Assembly: GCF_006345805.1 (NCBI RefSeq)
Contig: NC_043004.1
Span: forward strand, 5,952,001 to 6,016,000
Length of the DNA stretch: 64,000 nucleotides
Direction: 5' to 3'
Origin: Octopus sinensis
Taxonomy: Eukaryota
The notes beneath the pieces are model-generated. The model was not told where the DNA came from. It ran no database searches and saw only the letters and a list, made by a program, of their open reading frames with translations. Of this stretch, positions 7,554-35,189 are shown one piece after another. A program made the translations under genes and the position numbers. The first letter of the stretch is position 1; each line of letters opens with the position of its first letter.

Positions 7554-8902
7554 ATATACTCCATTCGTTGCCTTTCCTGAATCAGCGTTTTCTCCGGCAG
7601 TACTAGAATCAAGGATAACGACTTACCCGCTCCCCGATTCGAGATTACTGGCCTTCTACCTAAGTCAGAAACGAAGTGGGAATAACATATTTCGATCCTA
7701 CAATGGCTGCCAACCAATTCTAATTTGGCCGCAAATTTAATTTTATTTAAAAGATACACCGTGTTTTTGATGTAAAGACATTAACTCGGTCAATAAAGAT
7801 TTTAAATTATTCACCCTTAACATCAGTCCCTGTCTTAAAAAAAAATTAACGGTAGTGAAATACTGTTAAGATTTTGTCCAAATGGATGCTATAAGAATCT
7901 ACTCAAGTTTAAATAAGTTGGGTGCCTCTTATGTCTTGAAATTGTTTCCGGAGTTAGATTCAGAGTAAGCGAGGACTTAATTACCGAGAATGTCAGCTGT
8001 GAAAGTCATGAATTTGAGCGTTTCTATCAGGAAGATATGCTATGCGGCCTTTTGAGAAATTGAAGGAAGATGTGAAACAAAACATTTGAGAAAGACTGAT
8101 CTAAACAAAACACTCCTTTTAACCATCGAATACTATGAGACGAAACCCTTGTGCAATTATTTTTTAGAATTCGAAATATTATGATGAAATATATTGTACA
8201 AATTCTGGACAGATCCAAATAAATTTGCGACTTCATTGTAAGCAGGCGCCTGCATTAACTCCATGACAGTCATTGTAGGATCGAGATGTGTTATTCTCGT
8301 TTGGTTCCTGACTTAGATAGAAGGCCAGTAATCTCGAATCGGGGTGCGGGTAAGTAAATACCCTCGATTCTAGTACTAGACTGCCGGGAAAATACACTGA
8401 TCCATGAAAGGCAGAGAATGGAGTACAGTGTTTTGTTTAGATCAGTGTTTCTAAAATGTTTTGTTTCACATCCTTCTTCGATTTCTGAAAGGTCGCATAG
8501 CATACCTTTCTAATGGAAACTCTCAAATTCATGATCCGCTCGCTAAAAGCAGTTAGTTTCTGGTCTTATTTAGCAATAATATAGCTTTCTTTTCCCGTGA
8601 TAAAAGAAAAAAGTCAACACCGGTCTGCTGGTTTCCCGCGCTAAAAAAAAACATATACCACATCCTTATAACTGCCACGCTCTTTGGATTTTGAGATTAT
8701 CTCCCCATCTCAAGTGGAACAGGCCTTAATTTGCTATTTGCTAATCATGCCACATTCTCTAGAGACGGAGAAAAATCTAATAAATCATAGTTTTATGTTA
8801 CATGGTGTTGGATATACCTGTACTTGTCTGTGTATGTATATATATATGTGTGTATGCATATGTATATATGTATGTGTATCCCAAAACGATATATATATAT
8901 AT

Positions 8903-9098
8903 AACAATTGCAGCGTGGAAGGTGTTTATAAGCCATTTAAAAAACACACAATAACCGTTAGATTCACTTCAACATTAAAATTTAGTGGTTTTTATGTGTT
9001 TCTTAAATGGCTTATAAACACCTTCCACGCTGCAATTGTTTTCGTTCCAGCACACGATCTCATATCAGGTCTCTTGCTATACGAGTACATCTCCGTAA
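8903..9098. mobile_element. Internally deleted copy of the palindromic MITE family
   Basis: Same ACAATTGCAGCGTGGAAGG arms and GTACATCTC tail as 59086-59416; flanked by (TA)n and (TACA)n. Confidence 0.75.
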
Positions 9099-9238
9099 TA
9101 CATACATACATACATACATACATACATACATACATACATACATACATACATACATACATACATACATACATACATACATACATACATACGTACGTACGTA
9201 CGTATGTATGTATGTATGTATATATATATATATATATA
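9099..9238. repeat. (TACA)n-(TACG)n-(TATG)n-(TA)n microsatellite
   Basis: Direct reading. Confidence 0.95.
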
Positions 9239-9239
9239 T

Positions 9240-10165
9240 CAGGTCACCCCATAAGTTCTGTCCGAATTTTGAATAACGAAAACAAGTGATCAAATGTTAT
9301 ATTTAATTGAAATTTAATCACCAATGTACTTCCCTAGATTATCTATGACTTCCATCTATTTACAAGCTTTTTAATCCCATCAATGTAAAACTCTTTTGGT
9401 TTCAAAGCGAAGAACTATGAAATGTCAGTTTCGACCTCCTCCTGGCTTGCGAAAGTTATGTCCACCAAATGATTCTGTAAACTACGAAACAAATGACAGT
9501 CTGAAGGAGCAAGGTTGGGAGAATAAGGTAGATGAGGAATTTTTCCCAACCAAGCTCTTCGATCTTATGTGATGTGATCTTTGCAGTGTGGGGCCGCGCA
9601 CTGTCCTGATGAAACATCACTCCTTTTCGATTCACTAAAGCGGGTCATTTTTTCTTCAAAGCTTGGTTTAAACGCTCTAATTGCTGACAGTAGACTTGAG
9701 CATTGATTGTTGCATTAGGTGGTAACAATTCAAAGTGGATTACTCCTTTGCAATCAGACCAGATAGAGAGAAGAAGCTTTTTCCCATGAAGTTCCCTACT
9801 CGGCTGTGGTTGAGCTTTTTCCCTTTTACCAAGCCACTGTTTGCGTTTAATATTTCGACAGAAGATCCATTTTTCGTTACCAGTCATAAGTCCTTCCGAA
9901 AAGTACCCCTGTTGTACTCTTTCTCCCCAACTTCCTCTCACTCTTTCTTCATGTTTCTTGGGTAACGCTGCGATGGACTGGCGTCCCGTCCGGCTGGGGG
10001 AAACATACGCCACGGAAACTGGGAAACCGGGCCCATGAGCCTGGCTAGGCTTGAAGGCTTGAAACGGGCGAATAAATAATATATATATATATATATATAT
10101 AACTAATGTAGGATAAAATTTTTTTCGGGAAAAAAATTTCATCAATGGCCAGCATATCAAAAAAT
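9240..10165 (-). mobile_element. Degenerate mariner (DD34D) transposon interrupted by a short SINE-like insertion at about 9960-10090
   Basis: TGNEKWI, KKLLLSIW, GVIHFELLP...TINAQVYCQQLERL, FHQDSARPH and PYSPNLAPSD motifs; mariner-like end TATCAGGTCACCCCATAAGT near 9237. Confidence 0.88.
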
Positions 10166-10530: not shown

Positions 10531-10984
10531 TATATATATTATATATATATATACGTATTTTGTAATTATCTGTTTAATTAATTGATTTCAACCTACATCC
10601 AACATATGAATCCCATTTTGGAACCACACCCTAGCATCACCTTCCTGATTTCTTCCCTTGAATGAAAATTAAATCATGCATACTAATAAGAAACTATATC
10701 GCTCTATATTGAAAAAAAAAAAAACACACTAAAGGATTTCCACACGAAAATTTAACTATAGGGGATATATAAAAGAAAAAACCCTATTTCTTGTACTTGG
10801 TAATGGAAAACGAAATATAAAGAAATTGAGTAGTCGGTAATAAATTAGACTTCGCTCTCTTCCATATTTTTTTCTATAACGATGTTATGCAAGAGAAATT
10901 TTCACTGAAGTCGTTTTGATAGCTGAGGGTCTTTAACCTTAAATTATTCAAGAATTTACGGTTCAACGAATTCTAGTAGTCACT

Positions 10985-11080
10985 TTGTACCTAGGCGGTC
11001 TCTGATACCCATAATGCAATAGCCATCATGGCTGTATTTTAAAATCTACTTCCGCCCGCTCTCGTTCACTCGTAACTTAT
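10985..11080. promoter_or_regulatory. Putative (possibly bidirectional) promoter of the XTBD gene
   Basis: Local CpG enrichment, ACTTCCGCCC (ETS/GABP-like plus GC-box-like) at about 11048-11057, and the palindrome AGCCATCATGGCT, about 150 nt upstream of the ATG. Confidence 0.5.
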
Positions 11081-11208
11081 AACTTAGTATTAGTTATAAT
11101 AACATATATATATATATAAATATATTATATACAGGGTATATACATACACGTACGGGGACGTAGCTCTATAATATATATCTATCTTTCTATCAAATTTATC
11201 AACTCGCA

Positions 11209-11424
11209 ATGTCTGATAAAAAAATTTCGAAATACCGAAATGCTTTTGAGAGTAGCACTGAATGGGGGCTACGAAGAAAGTTCCTTAAAGTACATCAAGA
11301 TAAGTTTGACGAAGACCGCCTGGTTTGCCTGTCCATGTGTTACGTCAATGTAGAGGTGTATGGATGCACCTATCCTGCGCCAGTGATGAAATGCATTCAA
11401 CGACTTAAAGCTGAGTTAAAGTGA
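11209..11424 (+). CDS. Stand-alone XRN2-binding domain (XTBD) protein, PAXT-1/CDKN2AIPNL-like, 71 aa, single coding exon
   Basis: Translation MSDKKISKYRNAFESSTEWGLRRKFLKVHQDKFDEDRLVCLSMCYVNVEVYGCTYPAPVMKCIQRLKAELK follows the XTBD pattern ES-x3-W-x-LR-x2-F-x3-H...L-x-CLS-x4-NV-x3-GCxY-x4-M. It has ATG and TGA, no repeat-like composition, and a CpG-containing promoter-like segment just upstream. Confidence 0.9.
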   Translation: MSDKKISKYRNAFESSTEWGLRRKFLKVHQDKFDEDRLVCLSMCYVNVEVYGCTYPAPVMKCIQRLKAELK

Positions 11425-13299
11425 ACTTTTACATCTTTACCATTCTTCCGTCTGGCCTGTATTTTCTTGAGATACCTGCTACATACATATGCGTAAAATG
11501 TAAATAACTTTACTATTTTTTTAATTACATATCAATCATCATCTGTACCATTAGACATTCTTCATCAGTCTAAATAAGGACACACGATGTAGTTTATGCA
11601 CCCTTAAACAGATGTAATGGTCACGGCCGGAATGCCTTTGATCGTAGCTGTACCCGATCTGACTTGACCTTCGACTAAACAATAACAATCGCTGTCTAAA
11701 TAAATTACATTAATCTCCTGAATTTATTATCTTGAGACATTTTTGAGAAATTTCTTTCTGAATTTTATTTTGTCTTGTTCCTTTGAACGGTGCTTTTTTT
11801 TTTTCAAGTATGTGAAGAATTCTACACTGAAAATAATCATTTCCATTGTTTTCGCGCATTTTCAAATGATTTCAATTTGACTTGATTAATATTTTCTCAA
11901 TATTCTACACATTTCAAGTATAATATATTCTCCAAAACATCTTTTATCAAAAATGCTGTCTAGTTAAAAATATTAATTCATTAACTGAAAAATGAATTTT
12001 TATAAACAAATTTACAAAAGAAATTATTCGTGTTTGATTTTGCTCTTTTAAATTTTTGTTTCGTTTTTGAAAAGAATATTTGATAAGGAATATATATATA
12101 GCTACAATGGTAGTTTATTGAAACTACATTTTGCTATTTTTTCAATATGTTCCAGTTTCTGTTACTTTGGTATTTTTCGAAAGATAAATGAAAGATGCTT
12201 TCATACCATATGCAAGAGGAATGCAGTGGTGCAATATTTTAAATTATTCAATTATTTTTGTCCCTATAACCTTTTGATAATTTGAAAAAATATTTCAGGC
12301 GCTACTTATAAAAAGGAAAAAAAAAAAAGAAAGCAATTAATTTATTAGATTTATGAGATTTATCCTCAAAGATTGACGGCTTAAATTTGAGGAATTTCTT
12401 TAAGAAATTCTTCCTCATTTAAAGCAGTCTCTTACACATGTTTAAAAAATTTAGTTGGGAATAGGCCAATGTGATTGCATTCTATTTAGTGAGTTTCTGT
12501 GATTTTGACTTCTTGTGTATATTGCGATACAGCGTTATTGAATTAAAGAAAATTTAACTTCGCTGCTTTGTTAATTGTATTTCCGTATATCACAGTTGTC
12601 ACACGTCTAATTAATTAATACCCACTACATTGCTTGATTTTTTTTTCTTTTGGTAACATTCTCTGAGAACGAAGATTTATTAAATGAATCTTGTGATATC
12701 ATTGAAACACCTCAAAGACCGTAATCATAATCTTTAGATAACTGGAATTCTTAAAATGTGGTCGTTTTGAAATGAATTGGACAGTAATGGCGAGTAAATA
12801 AAAATATTCACCATGGTTGTTTCATTTAATTTGGGATCATTCTTGGACATTCCAGCACCATATTGTGGCATTTTGAGGTTTGCGGGTGTATTAGTTTTTA
12901 CTGTAACTTTAGTAAACCTTCTACAGCTTAGTAATAGTATTATAAATAACATAACTTCACATTGCTAGCAAATGTTAAGTATCATAGTTTTAAATAACAT
13001 TTTATTGACCCCTCATAGAGTCAAGACATTTCGAAAACTAAAATATTTCAGTCTTTAACAACAATTCATACTATTATATTACTATCACAAAGTTCAGACA
13101 CTAAGCTGTACAATGGAATACCCAATTATGTATCTGGAACTAAATTCCTACCATATATCATTCTAGATAATTCAAAGAAAGTCGTCTGCTTCCTGATAGA
13201 GGCAAGCCAACTTCACCAACAAAAGCAGAAAACCACCGGTCTACTGTCTACTTGTGTTCTTTCTTTCTTTCTTTCTTTCTCTTTCTCTCAATTTTCCAT

Positions 13300-15325: not shown

Positions 15326-15359
15326 TCATTACTATTATATAATGATTCTGATAATTGAG

Positions 15360-15730
15360 AAGTGGCTGTGGTAAGTAGCTTGCTTACCAACCACATGGTT
15401 CCGGGTTCACTCCCACTGCATGGTACCTCGGACAAGTGTCTCTTACTATAGCCTTGGGCTGACCAAAGCCATGTGAGTGGATTTGGTTAACGGAAACTGA
15501 AAGAAGCCCATTGTATATATACATGTATGTGTATGTATGTATTTGTCCCCCCCCCATTTGACAGATGACGATGGTGTGTTTACATCCCCGTAACTTAATG
15601 GTTCGGCAAAAGCAACCGATAGAATAAATACTAGGCTCACAAAGAATAAGTCCTGGGGTCAATTTGCTCGACTAAAGGCAGTGCTCCAGCATGGCCACAG
15701 TCAAATGACTGAAACAAGTAAAAGAGTAAA
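15360..15730 (+). mobile_element. SINE family A, full length
   Basis: GTGGCTGTGGTAAGTAGCTTGCTTACCAACCACATGGTTCCGGGTTCA head through TGACTGAAACAAGTAAAAGAGT tail. Confidence 0.85.
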
Positions 15731-18059: not shown

Positions 18060-18290
18060 AAACATTCCATGCCAGTGGCTGTTGCCATCCTCGTCTGGCA
18101 CCTGTGCCAGTGGCACGTAAAGAGCACCCACTACACTCACGGAGTGGTTGGCATTAGGAAGGGCATCCAGCTGTAGAAACACTGCCAGATCAGACTGTGC
18201 CTGATGCAGCCTTCTGGCTTCCCAGACCCCAGTTGAACCGTCCAACCCATGCTAGCATGGAAAGCGGACGTTAAACGATGATGATGAATC
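18060..18290 (+). mobile_element. RTE-derived 3' end (family C; further copies at about 17625-17785, 18460-18600, 23370-23760, 31960-32230, 35430-35750, 39150-39450, 39680-40090, 44740-45300, 46860-47070, 47580-47830, 49200-49350, 54870-55200)
   Basis: TTGGCATTAGGAAGGGCATCCAGCTGTAGAAAC...CCCATGCTAGCATGGAAAGCGGACGTTAAACGATGATGAT, the same tail as the RTE at 36065-37530. Confidence 0.75.
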
Positions 18291-19489
18291 CTGTCCTAAT
18301 TTTCCACAAATTTCACCTCTGCAGAAATTGGAGATGATGTTCAAAAGTTGGTCTATTCCATGTGTGCTTGAGAAGTCTGTAAAATCATCATAGGAAGTTT
18401 TCCAGCTGTATATCTATTCAACTCTAACCCTACCAGGAGGATGACTTTAAAACACATCATCATCATCATCATTATTTAATATCTGCTTTCCATGCTGGCA
18501 TGGGTTGGACGGTTTGATGGGCTGGTTAGGTAGATTACATCAGGCTTCGCTGTCTGTTTTGAGATGGTTCTTACAACTGGATACCCTTCCTAACACCAGC
18601 CTTTAGATTGCTTTATATATTCATGTATTATAATTCAACAAAATATAGGCATAGGCGTGGCTGTGTGCTTTTGGGCTCAATCTCACTGTCCTTCATTTCC
18701 AATCTTCTATGATATGTCTGGGAAAATATTACTCTACTTGATAACAGAAAGGGCATTGAACCATAGAAAATCTGCCTCAATAAATTCCGTCTGACCCATG
18801 CAAGCATGGGAAAATAAACGTTAAAACAATGATGATGATTGTTGTATTCCTCATCTTAAACATAGAACAAGGAAAAACACGAAGACTTAAAAAAGACTTA
18901 AAAAATCACACTTTCTTTAAAATAACTTAACTGTTAAAAACAAAATTTTCATTTGAATTTTTGTTTTTTAGTTTTGAAAGTTAAAAGGGGTTCTTACTAA
19001 TATGATGTAACAATACTTTTATGGTGATTTTTGTCAAAATTATTTCGACCTATAAATAAATGTATCTTGTTGAACTAACATCTTAAAGCATTCTAGGGCA
19101 GTATTTGCTGTAAAGGGGCGTAACTGTGTAATTTCCACTTCGGCTTCTGTTGCATTCGAATTTCCCGAAGTCTTTTTTCATTCAAAGCTTTCGAAAATAA
19201 ATATAATTATCTTCTTGATTGAACTTACATTTAATTCTAATATTATTTGTTTATTTTAGATTTCTAAGCTTCAAAACTATTGAGATCATATTACTATCGA
19301 AATTAGTGGGTATTTTGCAATAATATCAAACATGGTTTCAAAATATAAAGAAAACGTTACATGCCCTAATAGTACGTTTTAGTTTACGGACATTAGATAT
19401 GTGCAGGAGAAAAAAAAGTTGTTTAAACTGTTTCTCATATCTGAAATTGAGATCTTAAAAGTTGCAAATTGACTCAACCAAACTTTATC

Positions 19490-22705: not shown

Positions 22706-23095
22706 TAGGCACAGGAGTGGCTGTGTGGTAAGTATCTTGCTTACCAACCACACGGTTCCGGGTTCAGTCCCAGTGCGTGGAACCTTGGGCAAGTGTCTTC
22801 TACTATAGCCTCAGGCCGACCAAAGCCTTGTGGGTGGATTTGGAAACTGAAAGAAGCCCGTTGTATATATGTATATGTACATATATGTGTGTGTCTGTGT
22901 TTGTCCCCTCAACATCGCTTGACAACCAATGCTGGTGTGTTTACGTCCCTGTAACTTAGCAGTTCAGCAAAAGAGACCGATAGAATAAGTACTAGGCTTA
23001 CAAAGAATAAGTCCTGGGGGTCAATTTGCTCAACTAAAGGCGGTGCTCCAGCATGGCCACAGTCAAATGACTGAAACAAGCAAAAGAATAAAAAA
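22706..23095 (+). mobile_element. SINE family A, full length
   Basis: Near-consensus head to tail. Confidence 0.85.
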
Positions 23096-26569: not shown

Positions 26570-27990
26570 ATCTTTTATCTTTTTCTTCATTCACTCATTG
26601 GACTGTCGCCAGGCTAGAACACCTTTTGAAGGGTTTATTCAAACAAATCGATCCCTAGAACTTATTTTCAAGTGTGGTATACTTATTCTATCAGTCTGTT
26701 TTGTCAAATTGCTAAATTACAGACAGAAACAAACCAACACTGGTTATCAGATGATGGTGGATGGGACAAACGCAAAGATGCATACACACATATGTATGAA
26801 GCCTAATTGTGCTTGTCTGCATTACTATCTCACCTGCATTACTATATCAGCTCACCTGGACTTCTCTTATAGCCACTCTTTTCCCTGTGGATCCTTTGAT
26901 AAAGTTTTCAGAGCTTAAATTCAAATCATTTGAACACTACAGTTTTCAATACTGAGCATTTCCAGCTCTCACCTTTTGATTGCATACATATATATAGGCA
27001 GAAGAGTAGCTGTGTGGTAAGAAGATTGCTTCCTAACCACATGGTTCCGGGTTCAGTCCCATTGCGTGGTTCCTTGGGCAAGTGTCTTCTTCTATAGCCT
27101 CAGGCCAACCAAAGCCTTGTGAGTGGATTTGGTTGATGGAAACTGAAAGAAGCCTGTCATATATATATGTATATATGTATGGATTTGTGTGTCTGTGTTT
27201 GTCCCCCTACCATCGCTTGACAACCAATGTTGGTGGGCTTACATCCCTGTAACTTAGCAGTTCAGCAAAACAGACCAATAGAATAAGTACTAGGCTTACA
27301 AAGAAGAAGTCCTGGGATTGGTTTGTTCGACTAAAATTGGTGCTCCATCATGGCCACAGTCAAATGACCGAAACAAGTAAAAGAGTAAGAGAATGATTTC
27401 TCACAGTTTCTGTCTACCAAATTCACTCACAAGGCATTTGTTATCCTGGGGCTATAGTAGAAAACACTTGTGCAAGGTGTTGCACAGTGGGACTGAACCT
27501 GAGATCATGGATTGCAAAATGAACTTCTTAACAACACAGTTATGCTTGTATCTTATGGAAAGCAACAAAAATAACAAAAAAAAAAGGACAGTAGTGGCTG
27601 TGTGGTAAGCAACTTGCTTACCAACCACATGGTTCCGGGTTCAGTCCCACTACGTGGGACCTTTGGCAAGTGTCTTCTACTGTAGCTTTGGGCCAACCAA
27701 AGCCTTGTGAGTGGATTTGGTAGATGGAAACTGAAAGAAGCCCATCATATATATGTATATGTATATATATATATATGTGTGTGTGTGTGCGTTTGTGTGT
27801 CTGTGTTTGTCCTCCCAACCTCGTTTCACAACTGATGCTGGTGTGTTTACGTCTTCGTAAGTTAGCGGTTCGGCAAAAGAGACCGATAGAATAAGTACTA
27901 GGCTTACAAAGAATAACTCCTGGGGTTGATTTGCTCAACTAAAGGCAGTGCTCCAGCATGGCCACAGTCAAATGACTGAAATAAGTAAAA
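26570..27990. mobile_element. Cluster of family A SINEs (- 26570-26780, + 26995-27390, - 27390-27550, + 27590-27990)
   Basis: Family motifs in alternating orientation. Confidence 0.8.
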
Positions 27991-28372
27991 AAAAAAGAGA
28001 CAAAGTGTGAGTTTTAGAAACCAGACAGTTATAATGGATGAACTGAAGAGGAATCTTAGAAGCTTGTAAATACAAACAGAAGCCATTTAAGCTACAGTGC
28101 CACCATTTAAGCAACAGCACCAGAGCAGAAAGAGAAGGCATCAGATATGTGCGCTAATGGCCATGAGTCATTGTCAGATAGCCCAGCCTGATGACCTTTC
28201 ATGGATGTGATCTTGAATGGTTCATTCATATAGTAGCAGCACCATTCCAAATATGTGAGCAGTGCTAGAATGTGGGTCATACTTGTCTTTTGCATGAGAG
28301 TAAATAAATTTGAGAGCAAAAATGATTTTTGGTCATGAAGGAGAATTTCTAGTTTTTTTGTTTGAGCTGCAT

Positions 28373-32569: not shown

Positions 32570-32934
32570 CGATGACATTTATATATGTAAGTAAGTGAAT
32601 GTATAAATACATATATATATATGTGTGTGTGTGTGTGTGTATATATATACACACACATATATATATGTATGTACATATATATATGTATGTATATATATAT
32701 ATATATAGTATGTATGTATATATATATATGTATGTATGTATGATGATGATGATATATGTATGTATGTATATATATATATGTATGTATGTATATATATTAT
32801 ATGTATGTATGTTATATATATATATATGTATGTATGTATATATATATATATGTATGTATGTATATATATATGTATATGTATGTATGTATATATATATATG
32901 TATGTATGTATGTATATATATATATATAGTATGT

Positions 32935-32966
<32 letters not shown>

Positions 32967-33069
32967 TATATATATATGTATGTATATATATATATGTATG
33001 TATGTATATATAATATATGTATGTATGTATATATATATATATGTATGTATATATATATATATATGTATG

Positions 33070-33102
<33 letters not shown>

Positions 33103-33168
33103 ATATATTATAATATATATATGTATTAATATATATATATATATGTATGTATATTATATATATATATG

Positions 33169-33223
<55 letters not shown>

Positions 33224-33239
33224 ATATATATATATATAA

Positions 33240-33306
<67 letters not shown>

Positions 33307-33350
33307 CATATATATATACATACATATATGTATGTGTATATGTATGTATG

Positions 33351-33388
<38 letters not shown>

Positions 33389-33392
33389 CGTA

Positions 33393-33424
<32 letters not shown>

Positions 33425-33425
33425 T
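32570..33425. repeat. Large compound (TA)n/(TATG)n microsatellite
   Basis: About 850 bp composed almost entirely of TA, TG and TATG units. Confidence 0.95.
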
Positions 33426-34460
33426 AAATAAATAAGAAGCTAAGTTTAGATTGAGAAGGTAGTGGTGTTAGAGTTTATGAAGTGCTTTATCGTTCACAAT
33501 TTCCGACTAGCTCTTGTAAGAAATTCTTAAAGAACTTATCAAACCAACTTGTATCTACTAGGATAAAATAATCAACTATACTGACTCCACTTCCAGTACT
33601 AAGATGGAAAGAAGGAAATTCCTACTAAATTTTTACTGGTAAATTTCTTGAATACATAGTTGTCTGTATAGGTTCAATGAAATGGCTTTCCTGATCCACA
33701 CCAGTGAAAACATTGCAAGTTAATTTGTTCTACTTATCTGAGGTAAGCTGACCAAAAATAGATTCTATTGATGTGTTATAATGGTATGGGCTCTGTTTAG
33801 AAAAGGTATCATCCAGTTGGAAAGCATGTTTTTAGCATGGGAAAAAATAGTAAATGGATGTAAAGAGTGAGAAAAAAAAAATGAAAGGAAATAAGAATTT
33901 GTTCAACCTGTTTATTAATATGAGTCATCTATGTTTTGATTTAAGAAAAATAAAAGTGAAGCCTTTAAAAGCCACAATGTGAGAGTGTCAGTGCTTACTT
34001 AACTCATGGTTTTGTAATCTCTTATTATAATATTTAATAAAGACCAAATTCCCATTTAAACTAGGATGCTGGTAGAACATTGTAGTCTGCTTGAAGCCTT
34101 GTGATAAAGAAGTAAAATAACAAAATGGTGAAGACAAAGAGCTTCTTAAAACATGAAAAGAGAAAAGTTTTAGAACCTTTATATATTTCAAGAGCAAAAG
34201 CCCCACCATCAGAATTTAACAGTTAAGGAATGTTAGTCTGTTCCAGTGGTTACTCTTACTCTTTTACTTGTTTCAGTCATTTGGTTTCTTTTCCTAATAT
34301 TTTACATAGTTCAAACTACACAAGTGAATGTGTGAAAAACAAAACAGGTATTTTGAAAGAAGTATCTATAAAACCAGTTTTTAAACATGAAATAGCTATG
34401 AGGGTCCACCAGAATAAAATAGTAATCAAAGCGGTTTATAGATAAAAAGTAGTTGAGAAG

Positions 34461-34870
34461 GCGCAGGAGTGGCTGTGTGGGTAAGTAGCTTGCTTACCAA
34501 CCACATGGTTCCGGGTTCAGTCCCACTAGGTGGCATCTTGGGCAGGTGTCTTCTACTATAGCCTCAGGCTGACCAAAGCCTTGTGAGTGGATTTGGTAGA
34601 CGGAAACTCAAAGAAGCCCGTCGTATATATGTATATGTATATATATATGTGTCTATGTTTGTGTGTCTGTGTTTGTCCCCCTAGCATTGCTTGACAACTG
34701 ATGCTGGTGTGTTTACGTCCCCGTCACTTAGCAGTTCAGCAAAAGAGACTGATAGAATAAGTACTGGGCTTACAAAGAATAAGTCCTGGGATCGATTTGC
34801 TCAACTAAAGGTGGTGCTACAGTATGGTCACAGTCAAATGACTGAAACAATTAAAAGTAAAAGATAAAAG
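34461..34870 (+). mobile_element. SINE family A, full length
   Basis: GGCGCAGGAGTGGCTGTGTGG head (A/B-box-like) through tail. Confidence 0.85.
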
Positions 34871-35189
34871 AAAAAAGGTGCCTATATGTTTTTCAATGAA
34901 GTAATAAATGATAGTGAAGTAGTAGAATCTCAGTGTATGACTGGTATCTGTTTAATGTACCAATAACAAAGCCTCAATGTCTTTGCTTGACCAGCTAAAA
35001 ATAGTAGATTGGATTTCCTCAAATTATACTCCACTTTTAAAAAAAGGACATGTTGGATAATGCAGTTCTAGACATCTGAAAAGAAACAAAACAAATGGGA
35101 TGGTCATGACTGGAATACCATTGATTATAATTTTGCTTGATCTGTGTTAACCAAGGGCTAAACAACAACAACAGCAACCATATAAAAGA

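What the first reader, a model, noticed from the sequence alone, without database searches (positions are those of the whole stretch)
11209..11424. Intronless XTBD-only microprotein (71 aa): a minimal XRN2 partner
Seen: a complete ATG-to-stop ORF that is nothing but an XTBD, including the GCxY motif (Cys53/Tyr55). Known: XTBD proteins (C. elegans PAXT-1; vertebrate CDKN2AIP/CARF, CDKN2AIPNL, NKRF) bind and stabilise the 5'-3' exoribonuclease XRN2. The PAXT-1 N-terminal domain alone suffices, and its GCEY Cys/Tyr are functionally important. Inference: this may be a natural minimal XRN2 stabiliser or competitor, short enough to be dropped by 100-aa annotation cut-offs, and its lack of introns may indicate a retrogene. 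No strong donor that would extend it to NKRF-like dsRBD/G-patch exons was seen.
Basis: partly seen in the sequence, partly recalled or inferred. Interest (0 to 1): 0.8.

Follow-up and report, generated by a model that had tools for sequence, protein, structure and literature searches.

The report
Octopus 71-residue XRN2-binding-domain-only gene
The window holds a real, conserved octopus gene for a 71-residue protein made of a single XRN2-binding domain and nothing else; it is a small extra copy of the N-terminus of the ribosome-biogenesis factor NKRF, probably binds the RNA-degrading enzyme XRN2, and is a new member of a known kind of protein, not a new kind.

Summary
Window 11209..11424 (+) is an ATG-to-TGA ORF of 71 codons. 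It matches Pfam XTBD (83 bits against a cutoff of 27.6). Its predicted fold (pLDDT 94) superposes on the PAXT-1 XTBD crystallised with XRN2 (TM 0.87). It keeps all 16 best-conserved family positions, including Cys53 and Tyr55.

It is not exon 1 of NKRF. Octopus vulgaris and O. sinensis have a separate NKRF-like gene with an intronless coding sequence and its own, divergent XTBD (52% identity; GVTY instead of GCTY). No NKRF or CARF exons lie in the 52 kb downstream.

A second, unidentified lineage carries a colinear 71-codon ORF with TGA at the same codon, although synonymous sites are saturated. The stop is therefore conserved, not an intron read-through.

An ETS-like motif, an ATG-free leader and an AATAAA signal fit a small single-ORF gene. 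No transcript data were available.

The O. bimaculoides ortholog (97% identical, 71 aa) is already in UniProt as an XTBD-domain protein, and XTBD-only proteins such as CDKN2AIPNL are known. The retrogene idea cannot be judged.

Side finding: bivalve NKRF transcripts also release a free XTBD, through a two-ORF mRNA or a stop-carrying cassette.

The parts
11048..11054 (+). ACTTCCG, an ETS-type core promoter-like motif 155 nt upstream of the ATG
   Evidence: It is the only occurrence of this 7-mer on either strand of the 64-kb window. Lineage-B contigs have ACTTCCG and CCGGAAGT 70-90 nt upstream of their ATG. CpG observed/expected is 1.5-1.7 in 10801-11200. A promoter function is inferred, not shown.
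11055..11208 (+). putative 5' leader without any upstream ATG
   Evidence: There is no ATG in the 161 nt from the ETS motif to the start codon, where about 3.6 are expected at the window's ATG density. Lineage B shows the same (131-148 nt without ATG). A purine at -3 precedes the ATG in both lineages.
11209..11424 (+). complete coding sequence: 71 codons plus TGA, an XTBD-only protein
   Evidence: It is 97% identical to the 71-aa O. bimaculoides protein P0001. It is colinear with the 71-codon ORF of lineage B, with pN 0.30 against pS 0.89.
11362..11373 (+). codons for G52-C53-T54-Y55 (the GCxY motif)
   Evidence: The motif aligns with the GCEY of PAXT-1. PMC7054742 reports Cys54 and Tyr56 of PAXT-1 as required for XRN2 binding. 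Cys is present in 237 of 265 and Tyr in 256 of 265 family domains examined.
11421..11426 (+). GTGAAC overlapping the stop codon: a candidate splice donor that was considered and rejected
   Evidence: Its PWM score of 3.3 puts it only in the top 15% of all GTs in the window. Lineage B has TTTTGA here, with no GT. No homologous downstream exons were found.
11699..11704 (+). AATAAA, putative polyadenylation signal 275 nt after the stop
   Evidence: It is the first AATAAA or ATTAAA after the stop. Lineage-B contigs have AATAAA about 310 nt after their stop. Use of the signal is inferred.

Best explanation
Window 11209..11424 is a stand-alone, single-exon coding sequence for a 71-residue protein that consists of one complete XRN2-binding domain (XTBD). 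It is an old paralog of the XTBD at the N-terminus of the NKRF ortholog, which octopuses keep elsewhere as a separate gene with an intronless coding sequence. It is probably transcribed from its own ETS-type promoter about 150 nt upstream and polyadenylated about 300 nt after the stop, giving a small single-ORF mRNA.

Inferred mechanism: the four-helix domain docks on XRN2 through the canonical surface centred on the GCxY loop (Cys53, Tyr55), as PAXT-1 and CDKN2AIPNL do. Because it has no RNA-binding or localisation module, it would act as a plain XRN2 stabiliser. Because one XRN2 binds only one XTBD, it would also compete with adaptor-type partners such as NKRF for the XRN2 pool.

What is shown: the ORF, family membership, the predicted fold, conservation of the key residues, conservation of the stop codon, and the existence of a separate NKRF gene. 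What is inferred: transcription, translation, XRN2 binding and its effect.
For: Domain and fold. All 16 most conserved family positions carry the consensus residue.

Separate NKRF: P0117 (646 aa; XTBD, dsRBD, G-patch, R3H) is one uninterrupted 1941-nt ORF in O. sinensis GCA_006345805.1 and O. vulgaris GCA_951406725.2. Its XTBD is 52% identical to the window ORF.

Conserved stop: the ORFs of contigs L003-L007 are 71 codons, gap-free against Octopus, with TGA at codon 72. pS is 0.89 (saturated) against pN 0.30. The flanks cannot be aligned with Octopus.

Within lineage B, the ORF has 4 substitutions and 0 indels in 213 nt, while the surrounding roughly 950 aligned columns have 40 gap openings.

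The 71-aa O. bimaculoides ortholog is 97% identical.

Promoter, leader and poly(A) features.

No NKRF or CARF exons elsewhere in the window.

Literature: XTBD alone binds and stabilises XRN2; CDKN2AIPNL (XTBD only) substitutes for PAXT-1; one XTBD binds per XRN2 (PMC10511037). Cys54 and Tyr56 are required for binding (PMC7054742).
Against: No transcript, ribosome-profiling or peptide evidence could be obtained. The exact product is not on record in the gene-position collection.

The species of lineage B is unknown. Its orthology to the Octopus ORF rests on colinearity and the shared N-terminus, not on a supported tree: core identity is 55%, no higher than to bivalve XTBDs, and bootstrap is below 50.

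A GT overlaps the stop codon in Octopus, so lineage-specific splicing to an exon beyond the window is not strictly excluded.

In bivalves the homologous short ORFs belong to NKRF transcripts, so a link to a larger transcription unit has precedent.
Confidence: 0.68

Rival explanations
1. The ORF is the first coding exon of a longer gene, such as a CARF-like XTBD+dsRBD protein or a second NKRF-like gene. On this reading the TGA lies in an intron, just after a donor at 11420|11421.
For: aaa|GTGAAC overlaps the stop. The Pfam match ends at profile position 64 of 85. Many relatives continue past this point into a linker and a dsRBD. Octopus introns can exceed the 52 kb available downstream.
Against: The donor is mediocre, in the top 15% of all GTs, and lineage B has no GT there although it stops at the same codon. 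A stop at exactly the same codon in lineages with saturated synonymous divergence is not expected for intron read-through. No homologous exon was detected in the window with 166-270 family proteins as queries. The canonical NKRF is elsewhere and complete. The crystallised PAXT-1 XTBD is fully covered by the 71 residues.
Confidence: 0.1
2. The ORF is the upstream cistron, or the short-isoform end, of a larger transcription unit, as in bivalve NKRF loci. It would be translated as a 71-aa protein while sharing its mRNA or promoter with other coding sequence.
For: Bivalve transcript-like contigs show ORF1 as an XTBD of 73 aa, a 47-nt spacer, then ORF2 as the NKRF body (L010-L012). Another shows a 99-nt stop-carrying cassette ahead of a duplicated helix-4 segment (L013). 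In the Dreissena genome the XTBD ORF lies 1.6 kb upstream of an XTBD-less NKRF ORF.
Against: No ORF with similarity to an NKRF body follows in the window. No + strand ORF of 40 aa or more lies between the stop and the AATAAA at 11699. Octopus NKRF keeps its own XTBD at another locus.
Confidence: 0.1
3. It is a processed pseudogene or a decaying partial duplicate of the NKRF 5' end, with an ORF that is open by chance.
For: It is intronless and short, is not found among the gene calls of the collection for this exact sequence, and sits in a repeat-rich neighbourhood with a mariner remnant 1 kb upstream.
Against: It is only 52% identical to Octopus NKRF, so the duplication is old, yet the frame is intact. 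All 16 conserved positions are kept. Start, stop and length are conserved in O. bimaculoides and in lineage B with pN well below pS. There is no poly(A) tract at the 3' end; the nearest A12 is at 12317.
Confidence: 0.04

Closest known systems
CDKN2AIPNL (C2AIL), vertebrate XTBD-only protein of 116 aa
   Same: XTBD is the sole domain. CDKN2AIPNL forms a complex with XRN2 and can replace PAXT-1 in C. elegans to stabilise XRN2 (PMC10511037). The Octopus protein has the same architecture and the same conserved Cys and Tyr.
   Different: The Octopus protein has 71 residues with essentially no tails. Its coding sequence is intronless. It appears to derive from the molluscan or cephalopod NKRF-type XTBD rather than being a demonstrated ortholog of CDKN2AIPNL; no vertebrate sequences were placed in the tree, and the trees are unresolved.
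C. elegans PAXT-1 XTBD (PDB 5FIR)
   Same: The four-helix fold matches (TM 0.87, rmsd 1.2-1.5 A). The GCxY motif is present, and sequence identity is about 30%. The isolated domain of PAXT-1 is what was crystallised with XRN2.
   Different: PAXT-1 has additional C-terminal sequence. The Octopus protein is the domain alone.
[quoted passage not shown]
   Same: These are the closest sequence relatives, at 52-57% identity to mollusc and annelid NKRF XTBDs. The CLSMCY segment is shared with cephalopod NKRF.
   Different: The dsRBD, G-patch and R3H domains are absent. Cephalopod NKRF XTBDs carry NHVSYGVTY, with Val at both the Glu49 and Cys53 positions, whereas the 71-aa protein keeps NVEVYGCTY.
Short XTBD ORFs of bivalves (Dreissena DPMN_157200, 88 aa; P0207, 73 aa; P0026, 76 aa) and 120-aa 'partner of xrn-2 protein 1-like' proteins of chelicerates
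   Same: All are free XTBD-only products that end just after helix 4. The bivalve ORFs stop within one residue of the Octopus stop in the alignment.
   Different: The bivalve ORFs have an intron after GC-x and are part of NKRF transcripts, as an upstream cistron or a stop cassette. The Octopus ORF is unlinked to NKRF within the window and has its own promoter-like motif.

Membership tests
XTBD family (Pfam PF11952) | Profile HMM match above the curated gathering score | tested here: met
   83.3 bits against a cutoff of 27.6, E=9.9e-24.
XTBD family (Pfam PF11952) | Compact helical fold superposable on the PAXT-1 XTBD | tested here: met
   The AF2 model has pLDDT 94.3. Foldseek against PDB gives 5FIR chains only, TM 0.85-0.87, rmsd 1.1-1.5 A. 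This is a prediction, not a solved structure.
XTBD family (Pfam PF11952) | Conserved Cys and Tyr of the GCxY loop, reported as required for XRN2 binding | tested here: met
   G52-C53-T54-Y55 aligns with PAXT-1 GCEY. Literature. Family frequencies.
XTBD family (Pfam PF11952) | Physical binding to XRN2 | not testable with these tools
   No complex prediction or experiment was available. Binding is inferred from homology only.
NKRF orthologs | XTBD followed by dsRBD, G-patch and R3H in one protein | tested here: not met
   The ORF stops after the XTBD. No such exons lie in the window. The true Octopus NKRF-like gene is elsewhere.
CDKN2AIPNL orthologs | Orthology to vertebrate CDKN2AIPNL by phylogeny or synteny | tested here: inconclusive
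   NJ trees of the 65-residue core do not resolve the position of the Octopus ORF (bootstrap below 50). No vertebrate sequences were included. Only the architecture (XTBD only) is shared.
Retrogene (processed copy) | Intronless copy of an intron-containing parent, with a poly(A) remnant, target-site duplications and no inherited promoter | tested here: inconclusive
   The likely parent, the Octopus NKRF coding sequence, is itself intronless. No A-run is adjacent to the 3' end. A promoter-like ETS motif is present and recurs in lineage B. The duplication is too old for such hallmarks to survive.

The most novel reading that the evidence does not exclude
Coleoid cephalopods may have moved canonical XRN2 binding from NKRF to a free 71-residue XTBD. 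Their NKRF XTBD carries Val in place of the Cys reported as essential (and in place of the conserved Glu49) in octopods and in a distant Logan lineage, while the stand-alone paralog keeps every conserved residue. Bivalves free the same domain from NKRF in other ways, through a two-ORF mRNA or a stop-carrying cassette. Together with CDKN2AIPNL and the chelicerate short forms, this would point to recurrent selection for a free XTBD that sets how XRN2 is shared between nucleolar and other partners.
Probability: 0.25. Interest if true: 0.65.

Novelty: new member of a known kind. Interest (0 to 1): 0.42.

Why it matters
The protein is about the smallest natural XTBD-only protein one could have: 71 residues, the same extent as the crystallised domain. 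That makes it a clean natural reagent for asking what a bare XTBD does to XRN2, whether stabilisation or competition with NKRF-type adaptors.

It also shows that a conserved gene this short can be missing from the gene sets available here. No gene call with this product is on record, although the window's species and assembly are not known. The O. bimaculoides copy, however, is already in UniProt.

The wider comparison suggests that NKRF has repeatedly released its XRN2-binding module as a separate product: as a paralogous gene in cephalopods, and as an upstream cistron or stop cassette in bivalves. If confirmed, the bivalve case would be a tidy example of a gene splitting into a two-ORF animal mRNA.

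Tried and rejected
1. NKRF exon-1 hypothesis. I took this seriously after finding in Dreissena an XTBD ORF 1.6 kb upstream of an XTBD-less NKRF ORF and a Mya model that joins the two. I rejected it for Octopus once the separate intronless NKRF-like gene was found and tblastn with up to 270 family proteins found no other exon in the window. A weak hit at 18185-18310 is a SINE-like repeat.

2. Splice donor at 11421. The first percentile calculation had an indexing bug and was corrected. The site is mediocre and is absent from lineage B.

3. Exact-product look-ups of the window ORF, P0001, P0004 and P0005 found nothing on record.

5. P0055 and P0217 first looked like 139-aa and 171-aa proteins with non-conserved tails. 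The gene caller had read TGA as Trp; with the standard code both are 71 aa.

6. Octopus and lineage-B flanks were aligned to look for conserved UTR blocks. None was found beyond the ETS motif.

7. The run accessions were searched in papers to identify lineage B, with no hit. The P0231 sample list did not overlap the lineage-B samples.

8. dN/dS between L003 and L007 is uninformative, with only 4 substitutions.

9. Rfam found nothing in the window.

10. A search for an 'exon 2b-like' segment in the window and in Dreissena gave only noise.

Full report
**1. Observation**

Window 11209..11424 (+) is an ATG-to-TGA ORF of 71 codons. The ATG follows an in-frame stop about 40 nt upstream.

Pfam XTBD (PF11952) matches residues 6-69 with 83.3 bits against a gathering score of 27.6. 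The only PDB sequence hit is PAXT-1 in 5FIR, E=4.8e-9. That alignment is gap-free and places Octopus G52-C53-T54-Y55 on the GCEY of PAXT-1.

An AlphaFold2 model built on 61 family sequences has mean pLDDT 94.3 and four helices. Foldseek against the PDB returns only the five PAXT-1 chains of 5FIR, with TM 0.85-0.87 and rmsd 1.1-1.5 A over 65-68 residues. Everything else has E>2. The ordered PAXT-1 chains are 67-73 residues long, so the Octopus ORF is the domain and nothing more.

The Pfam match stops at profile position 64 of 85. The remaining profile positions lie beyond the stretch that superposes on the crystallised domain, in a part that is poorly conserved among relatives.

**2. Stand-alone ORF or first exon of a bigger gene?**

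This was the main open point.

(a) Dreissena. The first homology search found a 71-aa O. bimaculoides protein, 97% identical (UniProt A0A0L8HDB8, 'XRN2-binding (XTBD) domain-containing protein'), and an 88-aa Dreissena protein. In the Dreissena genome the XTBD ORF lies 1.6 kb upstream, on the same strand, of a 1162-aa ORF with dsRBD, G-patch and R3H domains but no XTBD. That made the 'mis-split NKRF' reading plausible.

(b) A separate NKRF in Octopus. A profile search then returned 'NF-kappa-B-repressing factor-like [Octopus vulgaris]' (P0117, 646 aa; XTBD, dsRBD, G-patch, R3H), an Argonauta ortholog (P0226) and Logan relatives. P0117 is encoded by one uninterrupted 1941-nt ORF in both O. sinensis and O. 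vulgaris assemblies. Its XTBD is only 52% identical to the window ORF. The window shares only SINE-like repeats with that locus. The window ORF is therefore a paralog of the NKRF N-terminus, not its first exon.

(c) No downstream exons. tblastn with 17, then 166, family proteins found no other family exon anywhere in the window.

(d) A second lineage. The closest non-Octopus relatives (P0055, P0217) come from Logan genomic contigs L003-L007. The gene caller had read TGA as Trp. With the standard code all five contigs encode a 71-codon ORF, gap-free against Octopus, with TGA at codon 72.
- Against Octopus, pS = 0.89 (saturated) and pN = 0.30. The flanks cannot be aligned.
- Between the two lineage-B species the ORF has 4 substitutions and no indel in 213 nt. 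The surrounding roughly 950 aligned columns have 49 mismatches and 40 gap openings.
- A stop kept at the same codon across saturated divergence argues for a true stop codon and against the first in-frame stop of an intron.

(e) The candidate donor. The only GT that could rescue the ORF in Octopus (aaa|GTGAAC at 11421) scores in the top 15% of all GTs in the window, so it is unremarkable. It has no counterpart in lineage B (TTTTGA).

**3. Gene anatomy (inferred)**

- The only ACTTCCG in the 64-kb window, on either strand, is at 11048, 155 nt upstream of the ATG.
- Lineage B has ACTTCCG and CCGGAAGT 70-90 nt upstream of its ATG.
- No ATG lies between the motif and the start codon in either lineage. 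In Octopus that is 161 nt, where about 3.6 ATGs are expected. A purine at -3 precedes the ATG.
- CpG observed/expected is raised in 10801-11200.
- The first AATAAA is 275 nt after the stop, against about 310 nt in lineage B.

Together these fit a small single-ORF mRNA of about 0.6-0.7 kb. No expression data could be reached.

**4. Function and mechanism (inferred from family knowledge)**

XTBDs bind XRN2. Mutating the conserved Tyr of PAXT-1 abolishes binding. An XTBD binds one XRN2. PAXT-1 stabilises XRN2, and the XTBD-only human CDKN2AIPNL binds XRN2 and can replace PAXT-1 in worms (PMC10511037). Cys54 and Tyr56 are described as required for the interaction (PMC7054742).

The Octopus protein has the consensus residue at all 16 best-conserved family positions. 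The most likely role is therefore a bare XRN2 binder. It would stabilise XRN2 and, having no RNA-binding or targeting module, would compete with adaptor-type XTBD proteins for XRN2.

**5. Relation to NKRF in cephalopods**

Octopod NKRF XTBDs (O. vulgaris/O. sinensis, a Logan Octopus-like sequence, and Argonauta) and a distant Logan NKRF (P0231, 46% identical overall) all carry CLSMCYINHVSYGVTY. This puts Val at the Glu49 position and Val at the Cys53 position. Those positions are Glu in 201 of 265 and Cys in 237 of 265 family domains. These NKRFs form a clade with 94% bootstrap.

The 71-aa paralog keeps NVEVYGCTY. This raises the possibility that canonical XRN2 binding is carried by the free domain in these animals. 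That is a hypothesis, not a result.

The trees of the 65-residue core do not resolve where the 71-aa ORF branches. A cephalopod-specific duplication of the NKRF 5' end is suggested only by the shared CLSMC segment.

**6. The retrogene idea**

The idea cannot be evaluated.
- The paralogous NKRF coding sequence is itself intronless in Octopus.
- There is no poly(A) remnant next to the 3' end.
- The locus has its own promoter-like motif.
- The duplication is old.

**7. Side finding in related loci**

Three transcript-like Logan contigs from one bivalve (L010-L012) carry ORF1, a 73-aa XTBD ending in TAA. A 47-nt spacer with stops in all frames follows. Then comes ORF2, starting MNYYEQFYDDLE..., which is the NKRF body. 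Both junctions coincide with the GT..AG introns of the Dreissena genomic locus. This looks like a mature two-ORF mRNA.

Another bivalve contig (L013) has a 99-nt, frame-preserving segment that encodes an alternative helix 4 plus a stop. It is followed in frame by a second helix-4 copy that continues into NKRF. Skipping the 99 nt gives a fused protein.

Mytilus NKRF is fused. Free XTBD products thus seem to arise repeatedly from NKRF in molluscs.

**8. Verdict**

It is unproven on function, cannot be judged on 'retrogene', and is overstated on novelty. An ortholog is already in UniProt, and XTBD-only proteins are a known kind.

Novelty: new member of a known kind. Interest: moderate (0.42).

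Noticed in passing
L010 1-2511, L011, L012 (Logan SRR18242212/13/17); Dreissena L001 10001-17306: In these bivalves the NKRF locus appears to give a two-ORF mature mRNA: a 73-88-aa XTBD ORF with its own stop, a spacer of about 47 nt with stops in all frames, then an XTBD-less NKRF body ORF (MNYYEQFYDD...). The contig junctions coincide with the GT..AG introns of the Dreissena genome.
   Followed up: partly
L013 416-514 (Logan SRR7949664): A 99-nt frame-preserving segment encodes an alternative XTBD helix 4 plus a stop (YPTQTMIQLQELIKELKGN*). It is directly followed by a second helix-4 copy (YPDSVHLQLKELTRDL...) that runs on into NKRF. This looks like a stop-carrying cassette from a duplicated half-exon, giving short and long isoforms.
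   Followed up: partly
L008/L009 10001-11941 (O. sinensis CM016859.1, O. vulgaris OX597814.1); P0226; P0231: The cephalopod NKRF-like coding sequence is intronless. Its XTBD has Val at two nearly invariant positions, NHVSYGVTY instead of NVE.YGC.Y, including the Cys reported as needed for XRN2 binding.
   Followed up: partly
L003-L007 (P0055, P0217): The Logan gene calls for these eukaryotic contigs read TGA as Trp, turning a 71-aa ORF into spurious 139-aa and 171-aa proteins. Other short eukaryotic ORFs in that collection may be inflated in the same way.
   Followed up: yes
window 9415-10160 (-): A mariner-type transposase remnant (Pfam Transposase_1, E=5e-23) lies about 1 kb upstream of the XTBD gene, split over overlapping ORFs, so it is probably degraded.
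   Followed up: partly
window 15358-15730, 22707-23095, 27590-27992, 34453-34877: Four copies of a SINE-like repeat of about 400 bp, 85-90% identical to a copy beside the NKRF-like gene (L008 17758-18176). The weak tblastn hits at 18185-18310 fall in similar repeat sequence.
   Followed up: no
window 32579-33427 and 8900-9290: Long TA/TATG-type microsatellite tracts give spurious 'YIYIYI' ORFs on both strands.
   Followed up: no
L002 834-1085 (-) and 5465-5704 (+) (ENA ERZ25069853 contig): An unidentified lophotrochozoan contig carries two XTBD first exons of about 80 codons, each ending in a GTAAGA or GTGAGC donor. One lies upstream of an NKRF body and the other is inverted about 4.5 kb away, which suggests a local duplication of the XTBD exon.
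   Followed up: no
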